Source of the DNA: Selaginella moellendorffii
Taxonomy: Eukaryota > Plantae > Lycopodiophyta
Direction: 5' to 3'
Assembly (NCBI RefSeq): GCF_000143415.4
Contig: NW_003314595.1
Coordinates: 1-10,176, forward strand
DNA length: 10,176 bases
Shown: positions 229-9,781 of the stretch, in pieces
Layout: every line of letters starts with the position of its first letter
Numbering within the stretch: position 1 is the stretch's first letter
The notes under the pieces: model-generated
Database searches by the model: none
Seen by the model: the letters and a program-made list of their open reading frames with translations, nothing else
What the model was told of the DNA's origin: nothing
Made by a program: the position numbers and the translations under genes

Positions 229-353
229 TGGTGGCCGTGGCAGCAGACCATTTCCAGGTTTAACGACTAACTGCTATAACATTGTCACGCGAACAGAGTG
301 GCGGCAGCTCCGGCGGCGCAATGCTCTCGGGGTAGCGCGAGCATGATCCAGCC

Positions 354-1581
354 ATGGAAGCTCTCAATGGCGTCAAGAAGAGGCATTTCAGGGTAGAGGG
401 TTTCCAGTGGCCCTTCTCGCGCGTGGCTATGGAGTGGAGGCCTGGCGCCGGCACCGCCAAGCGCAAGAAGATCTCCAGCGACATCAATGTCGCCACTCCT
501 CCTCCTCCTCCTCCTTTACTTCCTCACCCTTCCTCACTCCTCTCCCTCCGGCAGCTCAATCACTCACCACCACCGCACGATCCAAACTTTCTCCGCGCGC
601 TCCAGGCCAATGCTCTTCGGACAATGTCGGTGAATGGGAAGGGCTTCCTATCGAATCCTTGGTCGAACAGGGCAGCTTGGTCCAGGGTCCAGAGCACGGT
701 CGGGTCGAAGAAGGATCACGGTGGGGATTTGATGAACAAGAAGAGGCAGCTGGAGCTGTGGGACTTCGCGGGGTTCTCTCGTGAGAAGTTAAAGCTTCTC
801 AATGAGATTGAGGTGCTCATCGACTCGGAGGAGAATGCTTTGAACATGGAAGCTTCTGCTAAGGTTGGTCGAAGGCTCCTTCTTTCTTGAGTTTAGACCA
901 TCGTTTTATTTCTTCTTTCTTCTTTATAGGCCGCGGAAGGACGTCTTCGAAGCTTGCTGGATATCTGCGTATGCTCTCAATGCCAGGAGAATATAGAGAA
1001 CAGGATAGCTCTACAAAGCGTGAGAACCAAAGGTTTGGACGATGGCAAGGTTATTTCAGCAAGAACGAATGTAGCGACTGCAAAGCAAGAGGATCAGACA
1101 GCACCAGCGCTGGAAGGTCCCAAAACCACGAAGGTGACACTTAGATATAGTTTTCTAGGTCGGAAGTATTGCTTTGGTTGCGTGCTCTCAGCTTCCAGGA
1201 ACGATGAAGAGAGATTTCACGAAGCAGGAGTCTCTCGAAAAGGAAAGAGAGAAGGAGAGGCGCTTCTTTCTTGGAAATGTGAAAGAAGCCATGGAGCGTG
1301 ACCGGGTTGCGCTTGACAACTTTCTGCAGAAGCAGAGGCTCAAGCATGAAGTGTCTAAGCAGAAACTTGGCGAGGTGAAGGGGAGCTTTCTTGGGAAGTA
1401 TCTGAGCTTTCTTGACAACTCACTGGACGATGCTCTCCAAAAGGACGATTTAAGCGACAAGCACGACCAGGTTTTCAAGTCTTTTACGTGTTGCTTTATT
1501 TGATCTCGAGGTCTCACTTTAGATTTCCTGTGTTAGGATTCAGAAGGTTTGGAGGATCCTTCCAAACTTCGCAAGGATTAA
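354..1581 (+). CDS. Spliced gene for a hypothetical ~345-aa protein (basic NLS-like patches, poly-Pro, charged coiled-coil-like C-half); exons 354-863, 930-1133, 1192-1470, 1537-1581
   Basis: Three short phase-0 GT-AG introns (864-929, 66 bp; 1134-1191, 58 bp; 1471-1536, 66 bp) with pyrimidine-rich 3' ends join ORFs 354..890, 954..1301 and 1174..1503 in frame (...MEASAK|AAEGRLRSLLDICVCSQC...PKTTK|LPGTMKR...DKHDQ|DSEGLEDPSKLRKD*). No family recognised. Confidence 0.65.
498..515 (+). repeat. (CCT)6 microsatellite encoding Pro6
   Basis: cctcctcctcctcctcct in frame in exon 1 (ATPPPPPPLL). Confidence 0.9.
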
Positions 1582-2418
1582 ACTCCTGAGCTGGAACGAT
1601 CTTCTGAAAAGTCAGATGAAGTAACCGCGCGAACTTAACTTAGCTTTGCTGGCGCCGCCTTGTCTAGACACTAGAAAACGGAGGACATGCCTCGTAGTGA
1701 ACTGAAGCCAATCCGGCAGCCAGATTGCGAGAAGGCTGGTAGACCGCTTAAACCGAATCGCCACGAGGAGTTTGCGGGAACCAAGGCTTAAGCACTTCCA
1801 TAGGAGTTCTTGACAGAGAGATCAGGTGTCATGCTGCCAGGCTGCTAGGATTGTCTTCCAGACAACCTCTACATCCAAGACGTTTGATCGGCTTGGATCG
1901 AACGTAACAAGAAGAATACTCCAGGATTTTATGTGATCCAACACCTCCAGATGGTCAATGTGATCTTTCTTTCAGTAAGATATTTTTCTTCACTGGCTAG
2001 ACTAGGCTCTCACAACAATGGGGCGATCCGATGCTCGAAGAGGCTGACCGACGCAAATCCGCCGCCCCTATCTTCCATCGGATTAAGCTCTCTGTGCGAC
2101 CGACGATGAGAATGGGAGCTCGAGAATGAGTCCAGTGTCAAGGTACGAGCTTGACCCCAGGGCAAGCTTTTCTACAATCGCGTTGGAACCTTCGTTCGAG
2201 AAAAATCTCGAGGTATGGAGACAGCAATTCCACCGCTAACTAAGGTTCGCGCCTAGATCAAACTATTCATAGCAAGATCTTGTATGATTCCAGATCAAGT
2301 CCAATCTCGCCGAGAAACATTGACGAACTGCCGAGTTTTCTGTATCTCCGGAAGTTTACGAGGCAAACATTTTTGTTTTAAATTTCAAATGAACGAATAT
2401 ACTTCGACTTGGGCGGGA

Positions 2419-3174
2419 CATTTCCAGGTTTAACAACTAACTGCGAGTGGCAGCAGCTCCGGCAGCCTCGGTGGTAGCGCGAGCATGATCCGGCCATGGA
2501 AGCTCTCAATGGCGTCAAGAAGAGGCATTCCAGGGCAGAGGCTTTCCAGTGGCCCTTCTCGCACGGCCTGGCGCCGGCACGACCAAGCGCAAGAAGATCT
2601 CCAGGGACATCAATGTCGCCACTCCTTTTCCTAGGCTAATGCTCTTCGGACAATGTCGGTGAATGGGAAGGGCTTCCGATAGAATCCTTGGTCAAACAGG
2701 GCAGCTTGGTCCATGGTCCAGAGCACTCGGCTCGAAGAAGGATCATGGTGGGGATTTGATGAACAAGAAGAGGCAGCTGGAGTTGTGGGACTTCGAGGGG
2801 TTCTTTAGTGAGAAGTTAAAGCTTCTCAATGAGATTGAGGCGCTCATCGACTCCAAGGAAAATGCTTTGAACATGGAAGCTTCTGCTAAAGTTGGTCGAA
2901 GGCTCCTTCTTTCTTGAGTTTAAACCATCGTTTTATTATTTCTTTCTTCTTTCTAGGCCGTGGAAGGACGTCTTCAAAGCTTGCTGGATATCTGCGTATG
3001 CTCTCAATCCTAGGAGAATATACAGAACAGGATAGCTCTACCGAAAAGTAAAGAGAGAAGGAGAGGCCCTTCGTTCTGGGAAGTGTGAAAGAAGCTATGG
3101 AGCGTGACCAGGTTGCACTTGACAACTTTCTGCAGAAGCAGAGGCTCAAGCATGAAGCGTCTAAGCAGAAACTT
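2419..3174 (+). pseudogene. Truncated, deletion-riddled direct duplicate of 249-1368 (the gene at 354)
   Basis: Highly similar blocks run from catttccaggtttaac (249 / 2419) to ctaagcagaaactt (1368 / 3174), with ATG at 2496. It lacks about 275-295, 423-438 (16 bp, frameshift leading to an early TAA), ~501-599 and ~1014-1235 of copy 1. Intron 1 is retained (2891-2956). Confidence 0.9.
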
Positions 3175-3177
3175 AAA

Positions 3178-3370
3178 CCCGAGAGGCTATTCGCAACGTA
3201 TACGAATCGTGGCCAATAGGCGAGCAAGCTGGTGGACTCGAGGAGCTTTGAGCGACGTTGGAACACAATCGAGGCATATCCCGGAATGATCATCATGGAG
3301 GCGCTTGAAATTTTTTGGAGCTCATGCCCGAGTGTAACGGACTAATTTTTCCGATGCCATGCCAGAGAAT
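3178..3370 (+). pseudogene. Highly decayed PPR-like fragment
   Basis: Broken translation LFATY..G.*..LVDSRSFE..WNTIEAY...EALEIF..(L)MPE...F.DAMPE resembles S/P-type PLS PPR motifs (LVESRSFFD, WN.L..GY, ALEIF in the PPR at 8370-9431). It contains stops and frameshifts. Confidence 0.45.
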
Positions 3371-3554
3371 GGTTTCTTAAGGTAAATTAGGGTACGTTCT
3401 TTGAATGCTGCGTGCTGCAGCACAACCAACAATTGGAAAAGTTGAGAAAGTTCTTTATTGCTATTCTCCTTGTATGGTGGAACCATGTGTAAGTTGTTGA
3501 CTAGCAAAAGCCCCTCAAGGATCTAATCCATAAAATTTGTAAATTTAGGGTTTG

Positions 3555-4225
3555 ATGGCAAAGGATGAGTTTAATATTACTATTAACAGTAACTCAAAGT
3601 TTATGAGTGAAGTTATGAGGACTTTGACTGTATTACCAATGATTCTTGATTATGATATAATTTTAGGTTCACCTTGGATACATAAACATTGCTTAGAGTT
3701 AGACTGCAATAGCATAATAAATACTCTAACATTTGAGGACTACATGTTGCCTCATGGGTGATTACAACTTATCTAAGACCAGAAAAATACAAGAGAATAA
3801 ATCAACATATACATACTGTGGGAAATCAATGATCAGAAAATCAGAATTGAAATAGATAATGGTTGTGCAAGTTCTGGAATACTTATCAGGAAACTCGGGG
3901 TTAAAGTAGTTCACGATTCCAAGTATTTTGCAGAAAGGCTAACTCCATAAGTTCAAATGAAAGTTATGGAATTGGTATGTTATAACTAAACTTTTTAGAA
4001 AGAAGAAATTTTATTAGTCTAGAAGATTATAGAGAAACCATATTTCTTGGGATTGACTGGCTTCATAATCACTCAGCAATAATTAACTACAGGAATCATA
4101 TTGTTACTTTTATATCCAAAGAGTTGGATTGTTGGTATAGATTTCAATACCCATCTGGTATATATGAAGCAAGTAAAGATAGATTTGGCAAAGAGATGAG
4201 TAGTTTGTGTTGGTGCTCATTTTGA
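3555..4225 (+). pseudogene. Pseudogene paralogue of the tandem retropepsin-like aspartic protease gene at 5822-6868
   Basis: Same start context (aatttagggtttgATGGCA). Recognisable segments: DEFNIT..LTVLPMILDYDIILGSPWIHKHCLELDC, RKYKRINQHI, INDQKIRIEIDNG (DNG at 3855-3863), IFLGIDWLHNHSAIINYRNHIVTF..ELDCWYRFQYPSG..SKDRF..SLCWCSF* (TGA 4223-4225). The first DSG segment is deleted and there are several frameshifts and stops. Confidence 0.88.
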
Positions 4226-4469
4226 CCACAAATTTAATAAATACTTTTTTAGCACAGTCCATTTTGTTTGGTTTGTTTTGCATTACCAGATTATGGTCTT
4301 TTCATGCCTTTCCATTGTTGGTAATTCTTTTGAAGAAAGCAAGGGTGCAAGATGATACATTAATTATGGGAAATTGACTACAAGTTATATATGTAATTTT
4401 CTTTAGTATATGTGAAAGTTAGCACAAAGGTGATTGTTTTGGTATGTACATAGTATAAGTCTGCCTCCT

Positions 4470-4491
4470 TGATCAAGTTATGATCAAGTTA
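4470..4491. repeat. Perfect 11-bp tandem duplication (TGATCAAGTTA)x2
   Basis: tgatcaagtta at 4470-4480 and 4481-4491. Confidence 0.85.
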
Positions 4492-5076
4492 CGATGGAGC
4501 CAGAGATCACAAATAAGAGGTAACACTTAAGTAGTTTAGTAATCTTCAAAATAATGCTGCATGCCATGTATAGACACGTATTTATTCCAAGTCATAAGTT
4601 TGTATTTTATACATTTAGAAAAAAAGAAAACTATGTAGAAAATTTGGATAAATTTTTGTCATAAGAAATACTCAATGAAATATTATAGTTGTTCAAAGTT
4701 CTAATCTATGTTGGTGCTTAGTGTTAAACAATTTTAATAAATAATTTCAATCAAATATACCACGAATATCCAATAATATTTCAATCCAATGCTAAATAAA
4801 AAACTAATAAAATAACAATAATGTAAATATAAATAAGATATACCTGGCGTTTAATTTGGGTTAATATAAATGAAACCATAATTGTTTCAAATTAAAAAAA
4901 TGAATAATATTTTTTAATAGTGAGTATTCTTTATAACTATAATATTATTTTGAAAATATAAATAATCATTCTCTTTCTGTAAAACTTTATACATATGTAT
5001 AAATATAAATGTTATATTTTTTAGTGAAAATTTTATTTGTAGTTTTCAATTTATCTAAATTTTTGGTTTTCATAAG

Positions 5077-5705
5077 CAAACCTGTAGAAGGGTAGTGGAT
5101 ATATCTAAAATATGCTTGGATATTTTAAGATATTTTCTAACAGTTGTTATTCATTTAAATTAATCTTGTAAACTTTCCTAAACACTTCTTAATATATTCT
5201 AGTTTATTCTACAGTCAAATGGTTGATATTAAATAAGATTAATCTTGTGTCTATAAATTATCAATATCTTTATAATTATAAAAGTTTCTTTGATCAAATG
5301 GATTAATAAATAAAAATAATATTACTATTAAGAATTAAGTATTATTGCATGCAACGTGCACCAAATTATTTGTTTGCTTAACCAAACCTATAAGGGGATG
5401 ATTATACCTAGAATATGCTTGGATATTCTAGGATATTCTACCATCTAACAGTTGTTATTCATTTAGATTAATCTTGTATCTCTAATTTATAAATATGGTT
5501 TTAATTTATATAAACACTAAACGCTTTCTAGGATATTCTAGTTTAATCTAATATCATATTCAATAAGATTAATCTTGTGTTTATACATTATCAACATGTT
5601 AAAAATTATAAACTTTAATTGATCAATTGGATTAATTTAGAGAAATAACACTTCTATTAAACAAACTAAGCATTGAATTTAGCAATGTGTAGCAAAGTAT
5701 TTCTA
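5077..5705. repeat. Diverged tandem duplication, units ~5077-5382 and ~5383-5705, each with an internal sub-repeat
   Basis: Shared ordered blocks: caaacct, aatatgcttggatatt, tctaacagttgttattcattta, ttaatcttgta, atattctagttta, aataagattaatcttgtgt, ttatcaa, ttgatcaa.tggattaat. Confidence 0.85.
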
Positions 5706-5761
5706 CTTATGATAATATTTATTCAAACAGAATCAAAATATAAAACAATTTATGTTATGAC

Positions 5762-5995
5762 ACATGTCCAGAGAGGTATATGTCCATGAGAGAGGTCCCC
5801 TTGGTCCACAAAAGCCAGAGCTCAAGCATGCACGGCTTTGCCTTTAGAACTCAAAAACTCCAAGCTTAACAATGTATTGGTCAACAATCTGATCCTGTGC
5901 AGTAAGAATTGTGATGTGATTTGGAGAACCATTCTTATCCATCCTAAAGAATTGCTCCAGAGCTTGCTTGCCTTTGCCATAACCAAGACTGAGGC
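5762..5995 (-). pseudogene. Captured PPR gene fragment homologous to 8444-8716
   Basis: Collinear DNA similarity, e.g. gtccacaaaagccagagctcaagcatgcacggctttgcct vs gtccacaaaagcgagagctcgagcatgcacggccttgcct, and agagcttgcttgcctttgcc/cataaccaagactgaggc vs agagcttgctcgcctttgcc/cataaccaagagtgaggc. There are several small deletions. Confidence 0.88.
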
Positions 5996-6868
5996 CCTTT
6001 TTTTTTGGTGGCACCAACATAAACTATCTGTCTCAGTAACAAATCTATCTTTACTGACTTCAAATACACCATTTGGATATTGAAGTCTATACCAGCAACC
6101 CAATTCACTAGATTTAAAAGTAACAATATGATTCCTGAAGTCAATTATTGCTGAGTGCTTCTTAAGCCAATTCATCCCCAAAATTATGGTATCTATATTC
6201 TCTTTTATACCAATAAAATCTGTACTTTCTGAAAAGCTTCCCATTTTATACGTTAAATTCTCAATTCCATAACCATCTTTCATTTGCACATCTGCAGTTA
6301 ATCTTTTTGTAAAATACTTGTAATCACGAATTGCTTTGAGCCCAAGTTTCTTGAGAAGTTGAAGTGATATAGCTGACCAATCAGAACCATTATCAAATTC
6401 AATTGTGATGTGATGATCATTGATTCTCCCACTGTATTCTGCATAATGAAAAGTAGTACATATATGTTGATTTATTCTCTTGTATTTTCTGCACTTATAT
6501 AATTGGTAGTGATCATCAAGGGCACCATCAATCTCCTTGAGGCAATATATAGAATTATTGACCTCAAAAGTTAAACTGTTTATAGTGCCACTGCAGTCTA
6601 ATTTTAAGCAATGTTGATGTATCCAAGGTGAACCCAAAATTATATCATGATCAAGAATCAATGGTTTTACAGTCAAACTTGTTTTAAATTCACAATCCTC
6701 CACCATAAACTTGAAATCTTTAACTTGTGAATTACTCTCCACAGTAATATTGAATTCATCTACTAATTTCTGTGAGATAATATCACGGTCACAACCAGAA
6801 TCCCAAAAAACATTGATTTTCCTCTCCAACCCATGATCCCCAGATAACCTTCCAAAAGTTTCTGCCAT
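5822..6868 (-). CDS. Intronless protein with two tandem retropepsin (Ty3/gypsy-type aspartic protease, clan AA) domains plus a PPR-fragment-derived tail; 348 aa from ATG 6868
   Basis: Domain 1: INVFWDSGCDRDIISQKLV (DSG 6802-6794) ... DHDIILGSPWIHQH. Domain 2: GRINDHHITIEFDNGSDWSAISLQLLKKLGL (DNG 6394-6386) ... DTIILGMNWLKKHSAIIDFRNHIVTF. Both match the hydrophobic-D[ST]G...IS and ILGxxWL signatures of retrotransposon proteases, with N at the S/T position in domain 2. Confidence 0.8.
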   Translation of the reverse strand: MAETFGRLSGDHGLERKINVFWDSGCDRDIISQKLVDEFNITVESNSQVKDFKFMVEDCEFKTSLTVKPLILDHDIILGSPWIHQHCLKLDCSGTINSLTFEVNNSIYCLKEIDGALDDHYQLYKCRKYKRINQHICTTFHYAEYSGRINDHHITIEFDNGSDWSAISLQLLKKLGLKAIRDYKYFTKRLTADVQMKDGYGIENLTYKMGSFSESTDFIGIKENIDTIILGMNWLKKHSAIIDFRNHIVTFKSSELGCWYRLQYPNGVFEVSKDRFVTETDSLCWCHQKKRASVLVMAKASKLWSNSLGWIRMVLQITSQFLLHRIRLLTNTLLSLEFLSSKGKAVHA

Positions 6869-6869
6869 C

Positions 6870-6917
6870 AAACCCTAAATTCCCTACCCTACAGATCCTA
6901 GAGTGTGGGAATTTATA
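6870..6917 (-). promoter_or_regulatory. Putative TATA box and telo-box upstream of the protease ORF
   Basis: Minus-strand TATAAAT at 6917-6911, ~43 bp before the ATG. AAACCCTAA (telo-box, TTAGGGTTT on the sense strand) at 6870-6878 is also conserved before the paralogue's ATG (TTTAGGGTTT 3544-3553). Confidence 0.4.
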
Positions 6918-7689
6918 AGCCGTCAACTCTTTCCCTTTTATTTGTTGCGTGTTCAACCCTACAAAGTCAAAAAGTTACTACACCACCAAAACTGAGTTTT
7001 TTCACCGTATCCGCAAACCTGGAGATCACAGGATCAAAAAGCTTTCTTTCGCTGTCAATGTTTTCACCTCGTTCTTCCATTTTTCTAACTTCCACTGGCT
7101 ACGTTGATCCAAAGCACACCATCATCCACGTTCAAGCGCTCTTCTTCCTGTCGCAAATTCATGGATTGAACAAAGTTTGTACAAGCCAAGTGACGCAAAT
7201 TTTACAAAAAACCAGACAACATGTCATTTTAAGCCTTTTGGACAGCCACTTCAAGAACTCACTCGCAAGAAGGGAAGCTCATTCGACACACGAAAAGTAT
7301 GCAAGCCAAGCAAGACAGAAGAAAAACGAGAGGAAACACGAGCGTTTGTGGCTCTACCAACACGAGTGACATATCCATGGTAAGCTTGCGGAGCTGCTTG
7401 TTTAACAAGGCCACTGCTGGTTGGAAGGTCACAAAGGCATGTTGAGCGAGAAAATGATAAACATCGGGGGCCAATGGGACCAGAAACTTCCATGCTTTGC
7501 TGTAGGATTAGGCAACGATTACATACCTTTAAACCGCTTCCCCTCTCCTTGCTTTATCCTTGTTCTTCGCTGTTCTTCGCTTGTGTTCTGTTCCTTTCTC
7601 TTGAGTCCCCATGCCTTCCTGTTAAAAGAAGCATTAAATCGTTCCAACAACTGTTTCCTATGATGTTGGAGTTGTAAATCCGACTGACC

Positions 7690-9781
7690 TCGGGCATAGA
7701 TGTTGGACGTGAGAGAGTACGCAGAGCCTGTTCCATCGTCGAGCTTGAGAACCGACTTGAAGGCCATCCTGCCAAGCTCCACATTTCTCCACTTGAGGCA
7801 CGAACTTAAGAATGCCATCCACACCACCGCGTCCACCTTGCAAGGCCACGCTCTTTGAGCGCCTCGTTTTGAGCGAAAGAACTTCCCACCGATGCCTCTG
7901 TATCCAGTCCAGCACTGCAAGCTTGTACGTGAATCTGCTGCCCGAAGTCCAGTGCTGCAAGGCTCAGCGCAGGCTTTGAGAGCAGCAACGTACGTCCGGT
8001 TACAAGCTTTTCTCGTGCAGCAACCGAGTGTAGAACTCCAGAGCTCGCTCGGGTTCTCCAAACCGACTATATCCCAAGATCAAGGGGCCTTTGATGCTGT
8101 GAAGACTTCCGCCATGCTTTGACACTTGGTATACATATCCACCGAAAAGTAGTCATCCAGTTCGCAAATCCTTGCGACTTGCAAGTGGAGAGCTCTGCCT
8201 TTCTCCAGCTATTTCTTCACAAGCTTGCGGTCTTCATTCTCTGCTAGAGTCGCAACAGCCTTAAATGCAGCAGTAGCAGTGACATGATCTGCCTTAACAC
8301 CTTCCTCTTGCATGCTTTCGAACGATTGTAAGACGAGCTTGTGCTGGCCGCCGCAAGCATACCCCAGGATTATCCCCGTCCAAGTCGCACCACCATATCT
8401 TGGAAAACCACCCAAGCATCCACCATGCCTCCACACTTGGCGTACATGTCAACGAGAGCATTATGAACCGAGAGGTCTTCTCCGTCCACAAAAGCGAGAG
8501 CTCGAGCATGCACGGCCTTGCCTCTCTGCAAAGCCCGAAGCTTAACGACGCCTCCGTCGACAATCTGGCCCTGTTCCTTCTCAGCCAAGGTGACACAGGC
8601 CTTTAGTGCAGCAAGAACTGTGACACGATCTGGAGCGCAACCATTCTCGTCCATGCTAAAGAATATCTCAAGAGCTTGCTCGCCTTTGCCGTTCTGAGCA
8701 TAACCAAGAGTGAGGCAGTTCCAAGAAACCACGTCTGGACGTTCAATACTGTCGAAGAAACTGCGAGACTCCACCATGCTCCCACAGTTGGCATAGAACT
8801 CCACAAGTGTGTTGGTCACTAAGATGTTTGAATAGTGCTCACCAGCTTCCAAGCGAACGGCCCTTCCTTTTTCGAAGCTCTGAATCTTCAAGACTTCCGT
8901 TTCTTCTTCACCATAAACAACTGATCGATCCATCGATGGGGGAACAAACATGCCACGAATGCGTGCCGGGGCATGGGCAAGTTCCTCGTCCGCAAGACGG
9001 CAACAAGCTTTCAGCGCTGCGATGAAAGTTAAAGCATCCGGTGGAGTGTCTCCACGACGCATTCGAGCATAGATATCGAGAGCTTCACCACCCTCGCCGC
9101 TGCTGGCATACCCGAGAATCATGCAGTTCCATGTCACCACACTACGATGGCTCATTCCTTCGAAAACTCGACGAGCCTCTGTCAAGCTCCCACATTTTGC
9201 GTAAAGATCAATCAAGGTGCTCGCGACGAAGAGATCCGAGTCTAAGCCAAGTTTTACTGCTTTCCTGTGAATCTCCCTGCTCCTCTCTAAGAATACCACC
9301 AGTTGACCATCCAAAGCCTGCCCGGAATCCTTCTCTATCAAGCTGGAACAAGCCTTGAGAGCACCAAGAACTGATACTCGATCCGGTTTGTACCCTTCGT
9401 CTCCCAGACGAGCAAACAACTGTAGAGCCATTTCACCATTTCCACTCTGTGCATATCATATCCCTGTACGATCGAATTCCAGGAGACAACATCGCGATGC
9501 GGCATGCTGTCAAATGTTCCACGAGCATCTATCATGCTTCCGCATTTCGCGTACAGATCAAGCAGGATGTTGGCGACGATAATGTTTGAGAAGTCACCTG
9601 TCTCGGAAACATCCCTGTTCATTCTCCTGCCTAGTTGTAGATCTCTCATGCTTCTACATACCTTGAGAGCACCAACAACAATGCCAATGGCTGGTTTCAA
9701 TCCCTGACGTTGCATTCGTCTGTACACTTCATTTGAAAGACCCTGAGGTTTCTGCAGAAGTGGACCAACCTTCGCTTCCAT
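7690..9781 (-). pseudogene. PLS-class pentatricopeptide repeat (PPR) gene with C-terminal E-type extension, disrupted by frameshifts, deletions and stops
   Basis: Repeated motifs LLDLYAKCGSMIDARGTFDSMPHRDVVSWNSIVQGY, LIDLYAKCGSLTEARRVFEGMSHRSVVTWNCMILGY, PDVVSWNCLTLGYAQNGKGEQALEIF are spread over ORFs 9338-9784, 8370-9431, 8209-8436, 7806-7988 and 7519-8061. E motif: DAVVWMAFLSSCLKWRNVELGRMAFKSVLKLD...AYSLTSNIYA. There is a frameshift at 9453-9462, another near 8390, and an in-frame TAG at 8209-8211. No DYW domain seen. Confidence 0.92.

What the first reader, a model, noticed from the sequence alone, without database searches (positions are those of the whole stretch)
6011..6868. Stand-alone single-chain tandem retropepsin: a possible domesticated, pepsin-like fused dimer built from retrotransposon proteases
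Seen: one intronless ORF holds two complete retropepsin signatures (FWDSG...IIS...DIILGSPW and EFDNG...AIS...IILGMNWL..H.AIIDF), starts at its own ATG behind a TATA-like box, and has no gag, RT, RNase H, integrase or LTR in the window. Known: retropepsins (MEROPS A2, Ty3/gypsy PR) and host relatives such as DDI1 and ASPRV1/SASPase are single-domain homodimers, while pepsin-family (A1) enzymes are bilobed single chains thought to derive from duplication and fusion. Inference: this may be an independent, lineage-specific repeat of that fusion, with both catalytic Asp on one chain. A diverged paralogue (3555-4225) keeps the two-domain layout, the RKYKRINQHI linker, the atypical DNG and the Cys/Trp-rich C-terminus (CWYR.QYP.G...SKDRF...SLCWC), and many differences are conservative. 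That suggests a gene family once under protein-level selection rather than TE debris.
Basis: partly seen in the sequence, partly recalled or inferred. Interest (0 to 1): 0.85.

Follow-up and report, generated by a model that had tools for sequence, protein, structure and literature searches.

The report
Silent tandem retropepsin ORF in Selaginella
An unannotated reading frame in a small Selaginella moellendorffii scaffold does encode two fused retrovirus-type aspartic protease domains that could fold like a one-chain, one-flap "mini-pepsin". It was once kept intact by selection, but it now lies untranscribed in a decaying repeat island, so it is most likely a relic and not a working gene.

Summary
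On the minus strand, ATG 6868 opens a frame of 286 family-specific codons. D1 has DSG and lacks the flap hairpin; a 43-residue basic linker follows; D2 has DNG and keeps the flap. Pfam, profile-profile comparison, AlphaFold/Foldseek models and a controlled complex prediction all fit a retropepsin-like intramolecular pseudo-dimer.

The "domesticated gene" reading is only partly supported.
- The window is the whole scaffold GL377899.1 of S. moellendorffii, and no gene is called on this frame.
- The frame has lost its native stop and 3' tail. It reads 62 more codons into a PPR pseudogene fragment.
- It sits in a 3.5-kb AT-rich block with CpG o/e 0.08-0.20.
- No RNA-seq read lies on it, while the neighbouring PPR gene is covered 4-49x.
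- Two near-identical copies on scaffold GL377827.1 share the same 3' junction, so they arose by segmental duplication.
- All four partner copies carry frameshifts, and three also carry stops.
- The branch leading to the intact type shows past purifying selection (23 synonymous : 43 nonsynonymous changes, P=0.006; no stops, P=0.013).
- No two-domain relative was found among 1.8 billion representative proteins.

Most likely it is a recently silenced relic of a lineage-specific, probably retrotransposon-derived, tandem protease. The scan met this family before on other DNA of this genome (s1-433186) and reached a similar verdict.

The parts
6011..6868 (-). Family-homologous coding part of the intact (R-type) tandem retropepsin ORF: 286 codons, from ATG at 6868 to ..SLCWC
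   Evidence: ORF list and sequence. Pfam hits. Homology to the other copies ends at 6013-6016.
6560..6829 (-). Domain D1 (aa about 14-103): retropepsin-like, DSG at aa 23-25 (nt 6794-6802), ILGSPW helix motif, flap hairpin missing
   Evidence: hhalign 96.3% probability, E=1.6e-9, with a 16-residue gap at the flap. MAFFT register. Atlas features 0.96. AF2 pLDDT 82 and Foldseek DDI1 RVP TM 0.6-0.72.
6431..6559 (-). Inter-domain linker (aa 104-146) with the conserved basic motif KYKR(I/L)NQHI
   Evidence: Conserved in the window L copy and in the L001 and L003 copies. Low pLDDT in the full-length model.
6107..6430 (-). Domain D2 (aa 147-254): retropepsin with atypical DNG (aa 159-161, nt 6386-6394), flap present, ILGMNWL helix motif
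   Evidence: RVP_2 E=1.2e-9 and gag-asp_proteas E=4.9e-9. AF2 pLDDT about 90. Foldseek Ddi1 and HIV-1 protease E about 1e-6. PDB sequence hit to Ddi1, E=0.01.
6011..6106 (-). Cys/Trp-rich C-terminal tail (aa 255-286), conserved in the family. The native stop, 2 codons further in the other copies (..CWCSF*, ..CWCTI*), is lost here.
   Evidence: Alignments of the copies.
5822..6010 (-). Non-native read-through tail (62 codons plus stop): an A9 run (T-run at 5998-6006 on the + strand), then a decayed PPR gene fragment (5790-6005) read mostly out of frame
   Evidence: The fragment aligns to the PPR genes at 8465-8725 and L001 16285-16545. 22 of its 43 private changes are C>T or G>A. The same junction is present in both L002 copies.
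6869..6881 (-). 13 nt upstream of the ATG that are shared by all copies. They contain a telomere-repeat-like TTTAGGGTTT ('telo-box'-like). Homology between copies starts here.
   Evidence: 5'-end alignment of the R, L and L001 copies.
3542..4400 (+). Degraded inverted partner (L-type copy). It starts with the same 13 nt plus ATG, has the D1 catalytic region deleted, carries stops and frameshifts, and keeps the native stop at 4223-4225 and about 175 nt of 3' tail.
   Evidence: Inverted repeats I1-I4. Alignment. 2-3 stops and 5 frameshifting indels. The tail is homologous to L001.
4709..4747 (+). Small extra fragment of the family's 3' end (..TGTTGGTGC.. AATAAA region)
   Evidence: blastn 80% over 40 nt, E=4.6e-4. 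Seen in the sequence.
4401..5789 (.). AT-rich (21-32% GC), CpG-poor core between the two arms, with an 84-nt repeat family and no ORF of 60 aa or more
   Evidence: Composition, repeats D2, D8 and D11, ORF list.
6822..7142 (-). Transcribed 3' exon(s) of the upstream PPR-gene mRNA. Coverage fades out at about 6822, only about 15 codons into the protease ORF.
   Evidence: read laying depth table, CT..AC (minus-strand GT..AG) joints at 7146-7526, 7617-7688 and 6957-7018, and X1 contig 6822-6946.

Best explanation
The ORF is a silent, recently inactivated relic of a Selaginella-specific family of stand-alone 'tandem retropepsin' coding units. The family probably derives from a Ty3/gypsy-type retrotransposon protease.

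How the protein would work (inferred from models). D1 contributes Asp23 in DSG and has no flap. D2 contributes Asp159 in DNG and has one flap. The two fold against each other within one chain, joined by a 43-residue linker, into a pseudo-dimeric aspartic protease with a single active site and a single flap. This is the pepsin solution built from retropepsin parts.

History (shown). That protein was under purifying selection during part of the family's history. The copy in this window has lost its own stop codon and 3' tail and reads into a PPR pseudogene fragment. It lies in a CpG-depleted AT-rich block together with a degraded inverted partner. It has been multiplied only as part of a larger segmental duplication. 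It is not transcribed in the available RNA data.
For: Architecture:
- Pfam, hhalign, Atlas features, AF2 and Foldseek for both domains.
- Complex prediction of D2 with D1: ipSAE 0.67, best of 3 controls 0.00. That mark was reached by 51 of 78 solved complexes and 2 of 108 mismatched pairs. The runs agree in at least 74% of contacts and the partner pLDDT is at least 77. The interface is the two catalytic loops plus the strands after the helices.

Relic status:
- The window is scaffold GL377899.1 and no gene is called on the ORF.
- Zero reads over 3400-6748 in three RNA-seq runs, against depth 4-49 on the PPR gene. The same-genotype contigs of X1 stop at 6822. Eight RNA-like Logan runs from 3 studies hold no more than 9% of the words of 5700-7000.
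- CpG o/e is 0.08-0.20 across 3500-7000 against 0.7-1.1 in the flanks. The enclosed PPR fragment shows C>T-biased decay.
- The native stop and tail are missing.
- The L002 copies share the identical junction, so they are segmental duplicates. ORF divergence from L002b is 0.58%, the same as the flanks at 0.5-1.15%. Against L002a the low-divergence tract includes the non-native tail (0.45%), which points to gene conversion and not to coding constraint.
- All four L-type copies (window, L002, L001, L003) have 3-5 frameshifts, and three of them also 2-4 stops.

Past function:
- 23 synonymous and 43 nonsynonymous changes on the R/L branch, omega 0.42, P=0.006. No stop arose where about 4 were expected, P=0.013.

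TE link:
- The nearest outside relatives of D2 are gag-PR-RT proteins of Ty3/gypsy type, at 22-39% identity.
- In L003 the copy borders a 9-kb-or-longer AT-rich, CpG-poor block that holds a decayed gypsy-type RT/RNase H on the same strand.
Against: - The intact type has no stop or frameshift while its partners have many, and omega on its branch is below 1. A still-selected gene would look the same.
- RNA evidence comes from few studies and tissues, and most raw reads were only 95-99% identical to the window. A low or tissue-specific transcript could have been missed.
- No gag, RT or LTR is attached to any of the seven copies examined. The family has its own ATG and its own stop, so a retrotransposon origin is inferred, not shown.
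- Changes among the three intact copies are too few (4 synonymous, about 8 nonsynonymous) to tell neutrality from constraint.
- The D1 model was guided by an alignment with retropepsins, and the complex score may reflect memory of solved retropepsin dimers.
Confidence: 0.6

Rival explanations
1. It is a working, lineage-specific host gene: a domesticated single-chain pseudo-dimeric aspartic protease, expressed only in tissues, stages or stresses that the RNA data do not sample.
For: - The 286-codon frame is intact in three copies.
- Both catalytic Asp residues are kept, and the domains have specialised asymmetrically, with one flap only.
- There was purifying selection on the branch leading to the intact type, and no stop arose (P=0.006 and P=0.013).
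- The predicted D1-D2 interface passes its controls.
- It has its own ATG, with a telo-box-like motif and a TATA-like box upstream.
Against: - No reads or contigs lie over the ORF body, although the adjacent gene is covered.
- The block is CpG-depleted like silenced repeats.
- The native stop and 3' UTR are replaced by a read-through into a PPR pseudogene fragment.
- The TATA-like box is not part of the conserved unit and lies inside another transcript.
- Copy L002a carries changes right next to the catalytic Asp and in the ILG motif: I156F, E157V, D226N, I229F.
- The ORF is no more conserved than its flanks when compared with L002b.
- There are no orthologues or two-domain relatives among 1.84 billion representative proteins.
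Confidence: 0.15
2. It is the coding part of a still or recently mobile element, for example a non-autonomous retroelement or foldback-type transposon that carries only a protease. On this reading the copies arose by transposition.
For: - The family has several copies on several scaffolds and further notes elsewhere in the genome (these are leads only).
- All copies begin at the same 13 nt before the ATG.
- The two arms form an inverted pair reminiscent of long TIRs.
- The sequence is AT-rich and foreign-looking in composition.
- Omega below 1 between copies is typical of TE families.
Against: - The three intact copies share the same 3' truncation and the same junction with the PPR fragment, and their flanks are collinear. 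That indicates block duplication, not insertion.
- The L-type copies in L001, L003, L002 and the window are positional orthologues beside the same left gene.
- No target-site duplication is visible at 3541/6882 in the flanks read by eye, and there is no LTR, PBS, gag, RT or transposase.
- The shared 5' boundary is explained trivially by a single inverted duplication.
- The A9 run cannot be a retroposition tail, because the copy is truncated at its 3' end and not at its 5' end.
Confidence: 0.1
3. It is a fragment of a larger gag-pol polyprotein gene of a Selaginella Ty3/gypsy family with multiplied protease domains, left behind by deletion. On this reading the 'own ATG and stop' are secondary.
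For: - First-stage notes of this scan report gypsy polyproteins with three tandem retropepsin-like domains elsewhere in the genome. I could not test this.
- In L003 a decayed gypsy-type RT/RNase H lies 3.2 kb downstream of the copy, on the same strand and in the same AT-rich block.
- The best outside hits of D2 are gag-PR-RT proteins.
Against: - Seven copies in four loci all start at the same ATG. The four L-type copies end at the same stop, followed by a conserved 3' tail of about 175 nt.
- None has RT within the normal distance. The L001 locus, syntenic to L003, lacks the RT, so that RT looks like a separate insertion.
Confidence: 0.12

Closest known systems
Retropepsins of Ty3/gypsy LTR retrotransposons (MEROPS A2/A9-like, Pfam RVP_2 PF08284, gag-asp_proteas PF13975)
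   Same: D2 scores above the RVP_2 and gag-asp_proteas cut-offs. Both domains model as the retropepsin fold. Both have a D-x-G catalytic loop and the ILG..W helix motif. The nearest sequence relatives include gag-PR-RT proteins.
   Different: Two domains sit in one chain, where retropepsins are single-domain homodimers. D1 has no flap. D2 has DNG where D[ST]G is usual. There is no gag, RT, IN or LTR. The unit has its own ATG and stop. Identity to any known protease is only 22-39%.
Pepsin-like aspartic proteases (MEROPS A1, Pfam Asp PF00026)
   Same: The architecture is analogous: a single chain, two homologous lobes that each give one Asp, and only one flap over the cleft. Pepsins are thought to have arisen by duplication and fusion of a retropepsin-like ancestor (Tang et al. 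1978, as cited in PMC2642776).
   Different: No Pfam A1 hit. Each lobe is about 100 aa, against about 170 in pepsins. The flap is on the C-terminal lobe here and on the N-terminal lobe in pepsin (my knowledge). There is no signal peptide or propeptide evident by eye, and no enzymatic evidence.
Engineered tethered ('covalent dimer') HIV-1 proteases, e.g. PDB 1HVC, 1G6L, 4QLH
   Same: They are single-chain tandem retropepsins, 203 aa long, that fold into the normal dimer (listed). They show that such a fusion can be active (my knowledge of the literature).
   Different: They are man-made, with two identical domains, two flaps and a short linker. The Selaginella chain is natural, its domains share only marginal similarity (BLASTP E=0.003 over 16 aa), and it has one flap and a 43-residue linker.
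DDI1/Ddi1 and ASPRV1 (SASPase): host retropepsin-like proteases
   Same: They are the best structural matches of both domains. They are stand-alone host genes without gag-pol.
   Different: They are single-domain homodimers. DDI1 carries UBL/UBA domains. The Pfam Asp_protease (DDI1-type) score here is 24.2 bits, below its cut-off of 26.
Other tandem-retropepsin ORFs of the same genome, noted by this scan (e.g. s1-433186, a 313-codon ORF)
   Same: They have the same description (DSG plus DNG, stand-alone, unannotated). The follow-up on s1-433186 also judged its ORF silent and copied as a passenger of larger duplications.
   Different: They are on different DNA, and I could not read their sequences. 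That report saw no selection. Here the deeper branch does show past purifying selection.

Membership tests
Retropepsin / clan AA single-domain protease (Pfam RVP_2, gag-asp_proteas) | Sequence match above the family's curated score | tested here: met
   For the whole ORF, RVP_2 scores 38.5 bits (cut-off 20.3) and gag-asp_proteas 37.1 bits (cut-off 28.2), both carried by D2. D1 alone scores 16.5 bits, below the cut-off, but matches by hhalign at 96.3% probability, E=1.6e-9.
Retropepsin / clan AA single-domain protease | Catalytic Asp in a D-[ST]-G-A-type loop | tested here: inconclusive
   D1 has DSGC, which is canonical. D2 has DNGS: the Asp is kept but Asn replaces Thr/Ser. The DNG is conserved in all copies and is also seen in the unrelated hit P0005. 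Activity is untested.
Retropepsin / clan AA single-domain protease | Retropepsin fold with a flap hairpin | tested here: inconclusive
   D2 shows the fold and the flap. D1 shows the fold in an alignment-guided model, but the flap hairpin is deleted by about 16-18 aa. These are models, not structures.
Retropepsin / clan AA single-domain protease | One domain per chain, active as a homodimer | tested here: not met
   Two different domains lie in one chain. A D1-D2 heterodimer-like interface is predicted with ipSAE 0.67 against a best control of 0.00.
LTR-retrotransposon (Ty3/gypsy) gag-pol protease | Embedded in or adjacent to gag, RT, RNase H and integrase, between LTRs | tested here: not met
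   tblastn with gag/PR/RT proteins hits only D2 in the window, L001 and L002. A decayed RT lies 3.2 kb away in L003 only. There are no LTR-like direct repeats around the unit. Integrase was not searched for specifically.
Pepsin family A1 (Pfam PF00026) | Sequence membership in A1 | tested here: not met
   No PF00026 hit at E up to 10. Plasmepsins appear only as weak structural matches to D1 (E about 1e-2).
Pepsin family A1 (works-like comparison) | Single-chain bilobed enzyme with both Asp residues at one cleft | tested here: inconclusive
   The catalytic loops are predicted to touch. The full-length AF2 model failed for D1, with pLDDT 30-40. No enzymology exists.
DDI1-like proteases (Pfam Asp_protease PF09668 plus UBL) | PF09668 above its cut-off, and an N-terminal ubiquitin-like domain | tested here: not met
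   PF09668 scores 24.2 bits against a cut-off of 26, and no UBL/UBA hit was found.
Expressed protein-coding gene of S. moellendorffii | Annotated or transcribed | tested here: not met
   No gene is called on GL377899.1 at this place. There are zero RNA-seq reads over 3400-6748. The exact protein is absent from the protein collections.

The most novel reading that the evidence does not exclude
The intact copies (this window plus two on GL377827.1) still encode a functioning, lineage-specific aspartic protease that is a natural single-chain fusion of two retropepsin domains. The domains have already specialised asymmetrically: one flap, and DSG paired with DNG. This would be a second, independent and much younger replay of the duplication-fusion step thought to have created pepsins, expressed only in unsampled conditions.
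Probability: 0.12. Interest if true: 0.8.

Novelty: new variant of a known kind. Interest (0 to 1): 0.45.

Why it matters
The step from homodimeric retropepsin-like enzymes to bilobed pepsins is a textbook inference with no natural intermediate. I found no paper describing such an intermediate in the searchable literature.

This family is a natural tandem fusion whose halves have diverged and become asymmetric: one flap has been lost and one catalytic motif altered. It evolved under coding constraint for a time. Even as a relic it gives a concrete sequence with which to test whether such a fusion folds and cuts.

For genome annotation it is a caution. A long, clean, domain-rich ORF can persist in a silenced repeat island and be multiplied by segmental duplication without being a gene.

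Tried and rejected
- Word-indexed protein search with the 286-aa protein: no hit.
- IMG/VR and JGI metagenome contig scans: no relative.
- The search of earlier findings by sequence: blank.
- Full-length AF2 with a shallow alignment: D1 was not folded (pLDDT 30-40), so it gave no single-chain model of the two Asp residues. I replaced it with a D1-only model and the two-chain complex test.
- Retrocopy idea, from the A9 run at the 3' end: rejected. The copy is complete at its 5' end and truncated at its 3' end, the A-run is followed directly by the PPR fragment, and both L002 copies share the same junction.
- One 3.3-kb foldback or TIR transposon spanning 3542-6881: rejected. No target-site duplication is visible in the flanks, and L001 shows a tail-to-tail palindrome of the same unit with a different extent, which fits inverted duplication followed by decay.
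- Caulimovirid or giant-virus origin: no Peptidase_A3 hit and nothing in the viral contigs.
- Pairwise dN/dS of the intact copy against pseudogene copies (0.48 and 0.63, mosaic by region): judged uninformative alone, because the comparisons mix pseudogene lineages and conversion tracts. I replaced it with the polarised branch test and simulation.
- Literature searches for natural tandem retropepsins, in five forms, found nothing relevant.
- Whether PDB 9iy9 (a 420-aa exported protein of B. fragilis) is a natural two-domain retropepsin: only one retropepsin-like stretch was detected. Left open.
- The three-protease-domain gypsy polyproteins noted elsewhere in this genome could not be fetched, so that lead is untested.
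Full report
WHERE AND WHAT

The window is the complete 10,176-bp scaffold GL377899.1 of the Selaginella moellendorffii assembly GCA_000143415.2 (identical sequence). Its annotation has two genes only: SELMODRAFT_432461 at 354-1503 (+) and a PPR protein at 8370-9431 (-). Nothing is called on the finding.

The finding lies on the minus strand. At 32% GC a random frame of that length has a chance of about 1e-12 of staying open (my arithmetic), so the ORF is not accidental.

THE PROTEIN

- D2 (aa 147-254) is an unambiguous retropepsin. RVP_2 gives E=1.2e-9 and gag-asp_proteas E=4.9e-9, both above their curated cut-offs. The AlphaFold2 model has pLDDT about 90 there. Foldseek finds Ddi1 RVP domains and HIV-1 protease at E about 1e-6.
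- D1 (aa about 14-103) is below Pfam's threshold on its own (E=0.0078) and resembles D2 only marginally (BLASTP E=0.003 over 16 residues).
- Other evidence supports D1. A profile of the D1 copies matches a profile of nine unrelated retropepsins at 96.3% probability, E=1.6e-9. MAFFT independently puts DSG, IIS and ILG..W in register. ESM-Atlas features give 0.96 with 184 shared features to RVP_2 clusters. An alignment-guided AF2 model has pLDDT 82 and matches DDI1 RVP domains at TM 0.6-0.72.
- Both alignments show that D1 lacks 16-18 residues exactly at the flap hairpin. This deletion is shared by the other copies.
- D2 keeps the flap but has DNG where D[ST]G is usual. The DNG is conserved in all copies.
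- The full-length AF2 model failed for D1, so I tested the two halves as separate chains. The result was ipSAE 0.67 in three runs, against 0.00 for the best of three controls. That mark was reached by 51 of 78 solved complexes and 2 of 108 mismatched pairs. Contacts agreed at 74% or more and the partner pLDDT was 77 or more. The interface is made of the two catalytic loops (FWDSGCD and EFDNGS) and the strands after the ILG helices, as in retropepsin dimers.
- As the tool warns, this may partly be memory of solved dimers. It shows that the chain is compatible with an intramolecular pseudo-dimer, not that it is an enzyme.

THE LOCUS

- Codons 1-286 are the only part shared with other copies. After ..SLCWC the other copies have two more codons, a stop, an AATAAA and about 175 nt of conserved tail.
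- Here that end is replaced by an A9 run and a fragment of a PPR gene (5790-6005), which the frame reads for 62 more codons.
- An inverted, degraded partner lies at 3542-4400 (+). It starts with the same 13 nt plus ATG, has lost about 100 nt including the DSG, and carries 2-3 stops and 5 frameshifting indels.
- Between the arms is a 21-32% GC core with short repeats and one more scrap of the family's 3' end.
- The whole 3500-7000 block has CpG o/e 0.08-0.20, against 0.7-1.1 in the flanking genes.
- The enclosed PPR fragment has 43 private changes relative to two functional paralogues, and 22 of them are C>T or G>A. This is the pattern expected of long-methylated, silenced DNA (inference; Selaginella repeats are known to be methylated, from my own knowledge).

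EXPRESSION

- Three raw-read RNA-seq runs, about 1.4 Gb read from each, put no read on 3400-6748. The PPR gene at 7537-9300 is covered 4-49x.
- Minus-strand spliced reads (CT..AC joints at 7146-7526, 7617-7688 and 6957-7018) continue into a 3' exon that fades out at about 6822, only 15 codons into the ORF.
- Contigs of an older run of the same genotype show the same splicing and stop at 6822. Eight RNA-like Logan runs from three studies hold at most 9% of the words of 5700-7000.
- The TATAAAT at 6911-6917 is therefore inside another gene's transcript, and it is outside the part conserved between copies.
- Caveats: few tissues were sampled, and most raw reads were 95-99% identical to the window, so they come from a different haplotype or accession.

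RELATIVES

- phmmer against 1.84 billion representative proteins gave ten hits. The only family member is a Selaginella gene model (P0001) that splices the neighbouring gene onto 48 residues of a D1 fragment. The rest are ordinary single-domain proteases at 22-39% identity, several within gag-PR-RT proteins of Ty3/gypsy type.
- Viral and metagenome contigs gave no relative, and the Atlas returned only single-domain retropepsin look-alikes.
- Through neighbouring gene models I fetched three related loci.
- L001 (GL377635.1) and L003 (GL377629.1) are syntenic with each other. Each holds a degraded + copy beside the same left gene. L001 also holds a tail-to-tail inverted partial copy.
- L002 (GL377827.1) is collinear with the window. 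It carries a degraded + copy and two intact minus-strand copies, 97.6% and 99.3% identical in protein to ours.
- Both L002 intact copies have the same A-run and PPR-fragment junction, so the intact type spread by duplication of a block and not by insertion.
- Against L002b the ORF differs by 0.58%, like its flanks (0.5-1.15%). Against L002a the low-divergence tract (1.28%) also includes the non-native tail (0.45%), while the flanks differ by 4.6-7.8%. That is a conversion tract and not a sign of coding constraint.
- Among the three intact copies there are 4 synonymous and about 8 nonsynonymous changes. Some in L002a lie next to the catalytic Asp and in the ILG motif. This is too few to test.

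SELECTION

- Pairwise dN/dS against the pseudogene copies is 0.48-0.63 and mosaic (D1 0.22-0.33, D2 0.9-1.4). D2 is much less diverged from L001 than D1 is, which indicates conversion.
- I polarised changes with four degraded copies. The branch between the intact type and the degraded type carries 23 synonymous and 43 nonsynonymous changes (omega 0.42).
- Simulations that keep the observed mutation spectrum expect 14.4 +/- 3.1 synonymous changes (P=0.006) and about 4 new stops (P of none = 0.013).
- The intact type also has no frameshift, while each degraded copy has 3-5.
- So the tandem protein was maintained by selection after the two types split. This fits either a host gene or a transposing element.

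ORIGIN

- No gag, RT or LTR accompanies any copy in the window, L001 or L002.
- In L003 the copy borders a 9-kb-or-longer AT-rich, CpG-poor block that contains a decayed gypsy-type RT/RNase H 3.2 kb downstream on the same strand. The syntenic L001 lacks it, so it may be a separate insertion.
- First-stage notes of this scan mention gypsy polyproteins with three protease-like domains in this genome. I could not read them, so this stays a lead.

VERDICT

I found no description of a natural tandem retropepsin in the literature library. The nearest things are engineered tethered HIV-1 protease dimers and, by analogy only, pepsins.

The present copies look like a silenced relic. They are truncated, unannotated, untranscribed, CpG-depleted, block-duplicated, and surrounded by dead partners. 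I put 0.60 on a relic of a once-selected, probably retroelement-derived tandem protease. I put 0.15 on a still-working host gene, 0.12 on a leftover of a multi-protease gag-pol gene, and 0.10 on a mobile protease-only element.

The scan met this family before on other DNA (s1-433186) and judged it a silent passenger. My data agree on silence and block duplication, and they add evidence for past purifying selection and for the one-flap asymmetry.

Noticed in passing
window 261-1588 and 2467-3335 (+): The orphan gene SELMODRAFT_432461 (no Pfam domain) is partly duplicated in tandem at 92-95% identity. Paralogues lie beside the protease copies in L001, L002 and L003. One gene model (P0001, SELMODRAFT_424830) splices this gene onto a fragment of the protease D1.
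   Followed up: partly
window 6822-9431 (-): RNA-seq shows that the PPR gene's mRNA continues far beyond the annotated CDS (8370-9431). It passes through spliced 3' exons with minus-strand GT..AG introns at 7146-7526, 7617-7688 and 6957-7018. Most reads lack one base at 7578, and many sites show two alleles. The PPR, E-motif and N-terminal ORFs are in different frames in the scaffold.
   Followed up: no
window 5790-6005: A PPR pseudogene fragment is buried in the AT-rich block. It has 43 private changes against two functional paralogues that are almost identical to each other. The changes are strongly C>T biased (17 C>T against 5 G>A) and so strand-asymmetric.
   Followed up: partly
window 6869-6881 and 3542-3554; L001 11594-11606: Every copy begins with AATTTAGGGTTTG, 1.4 units of the plant telomere repeat (telo-box-like), 5 nt before the ATG. 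I could not tell whether it is a cis-element or just the edge of the inverted duplication.
   Followed up: no
window 5100-5607: A family of 84-nt and 35-nt direct repeats (61-97% identity) lies in the 21-23% GC core. No ORF and no match in the related loci except L002.
   Followed up: no
L003 12500-21000, RT at 15451-16149 (+): A block of 9 kb or more at 18-37% GC and poor in CpG starts right after the protease copy. It holds a decayed Ty3/gypsy-type RT/RNase H with many stops. The otherwise syntenic L001 lacks it.
   Followed up: partly
L001 11594-12947: Two protease units lie tail to tail as a near-perfect palindrome centred near 12530. The inverted arm is reduced to the last 57 codons plus the tail.
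   Followed up: partly
The look-up of sequencing runs row X14: A 2024 DNA run labelled with a different organism (organism B) holds half of the 31-mers of window 5700-7000. It could be another accession or species, or a mislabelled sample.
   Followed up: no
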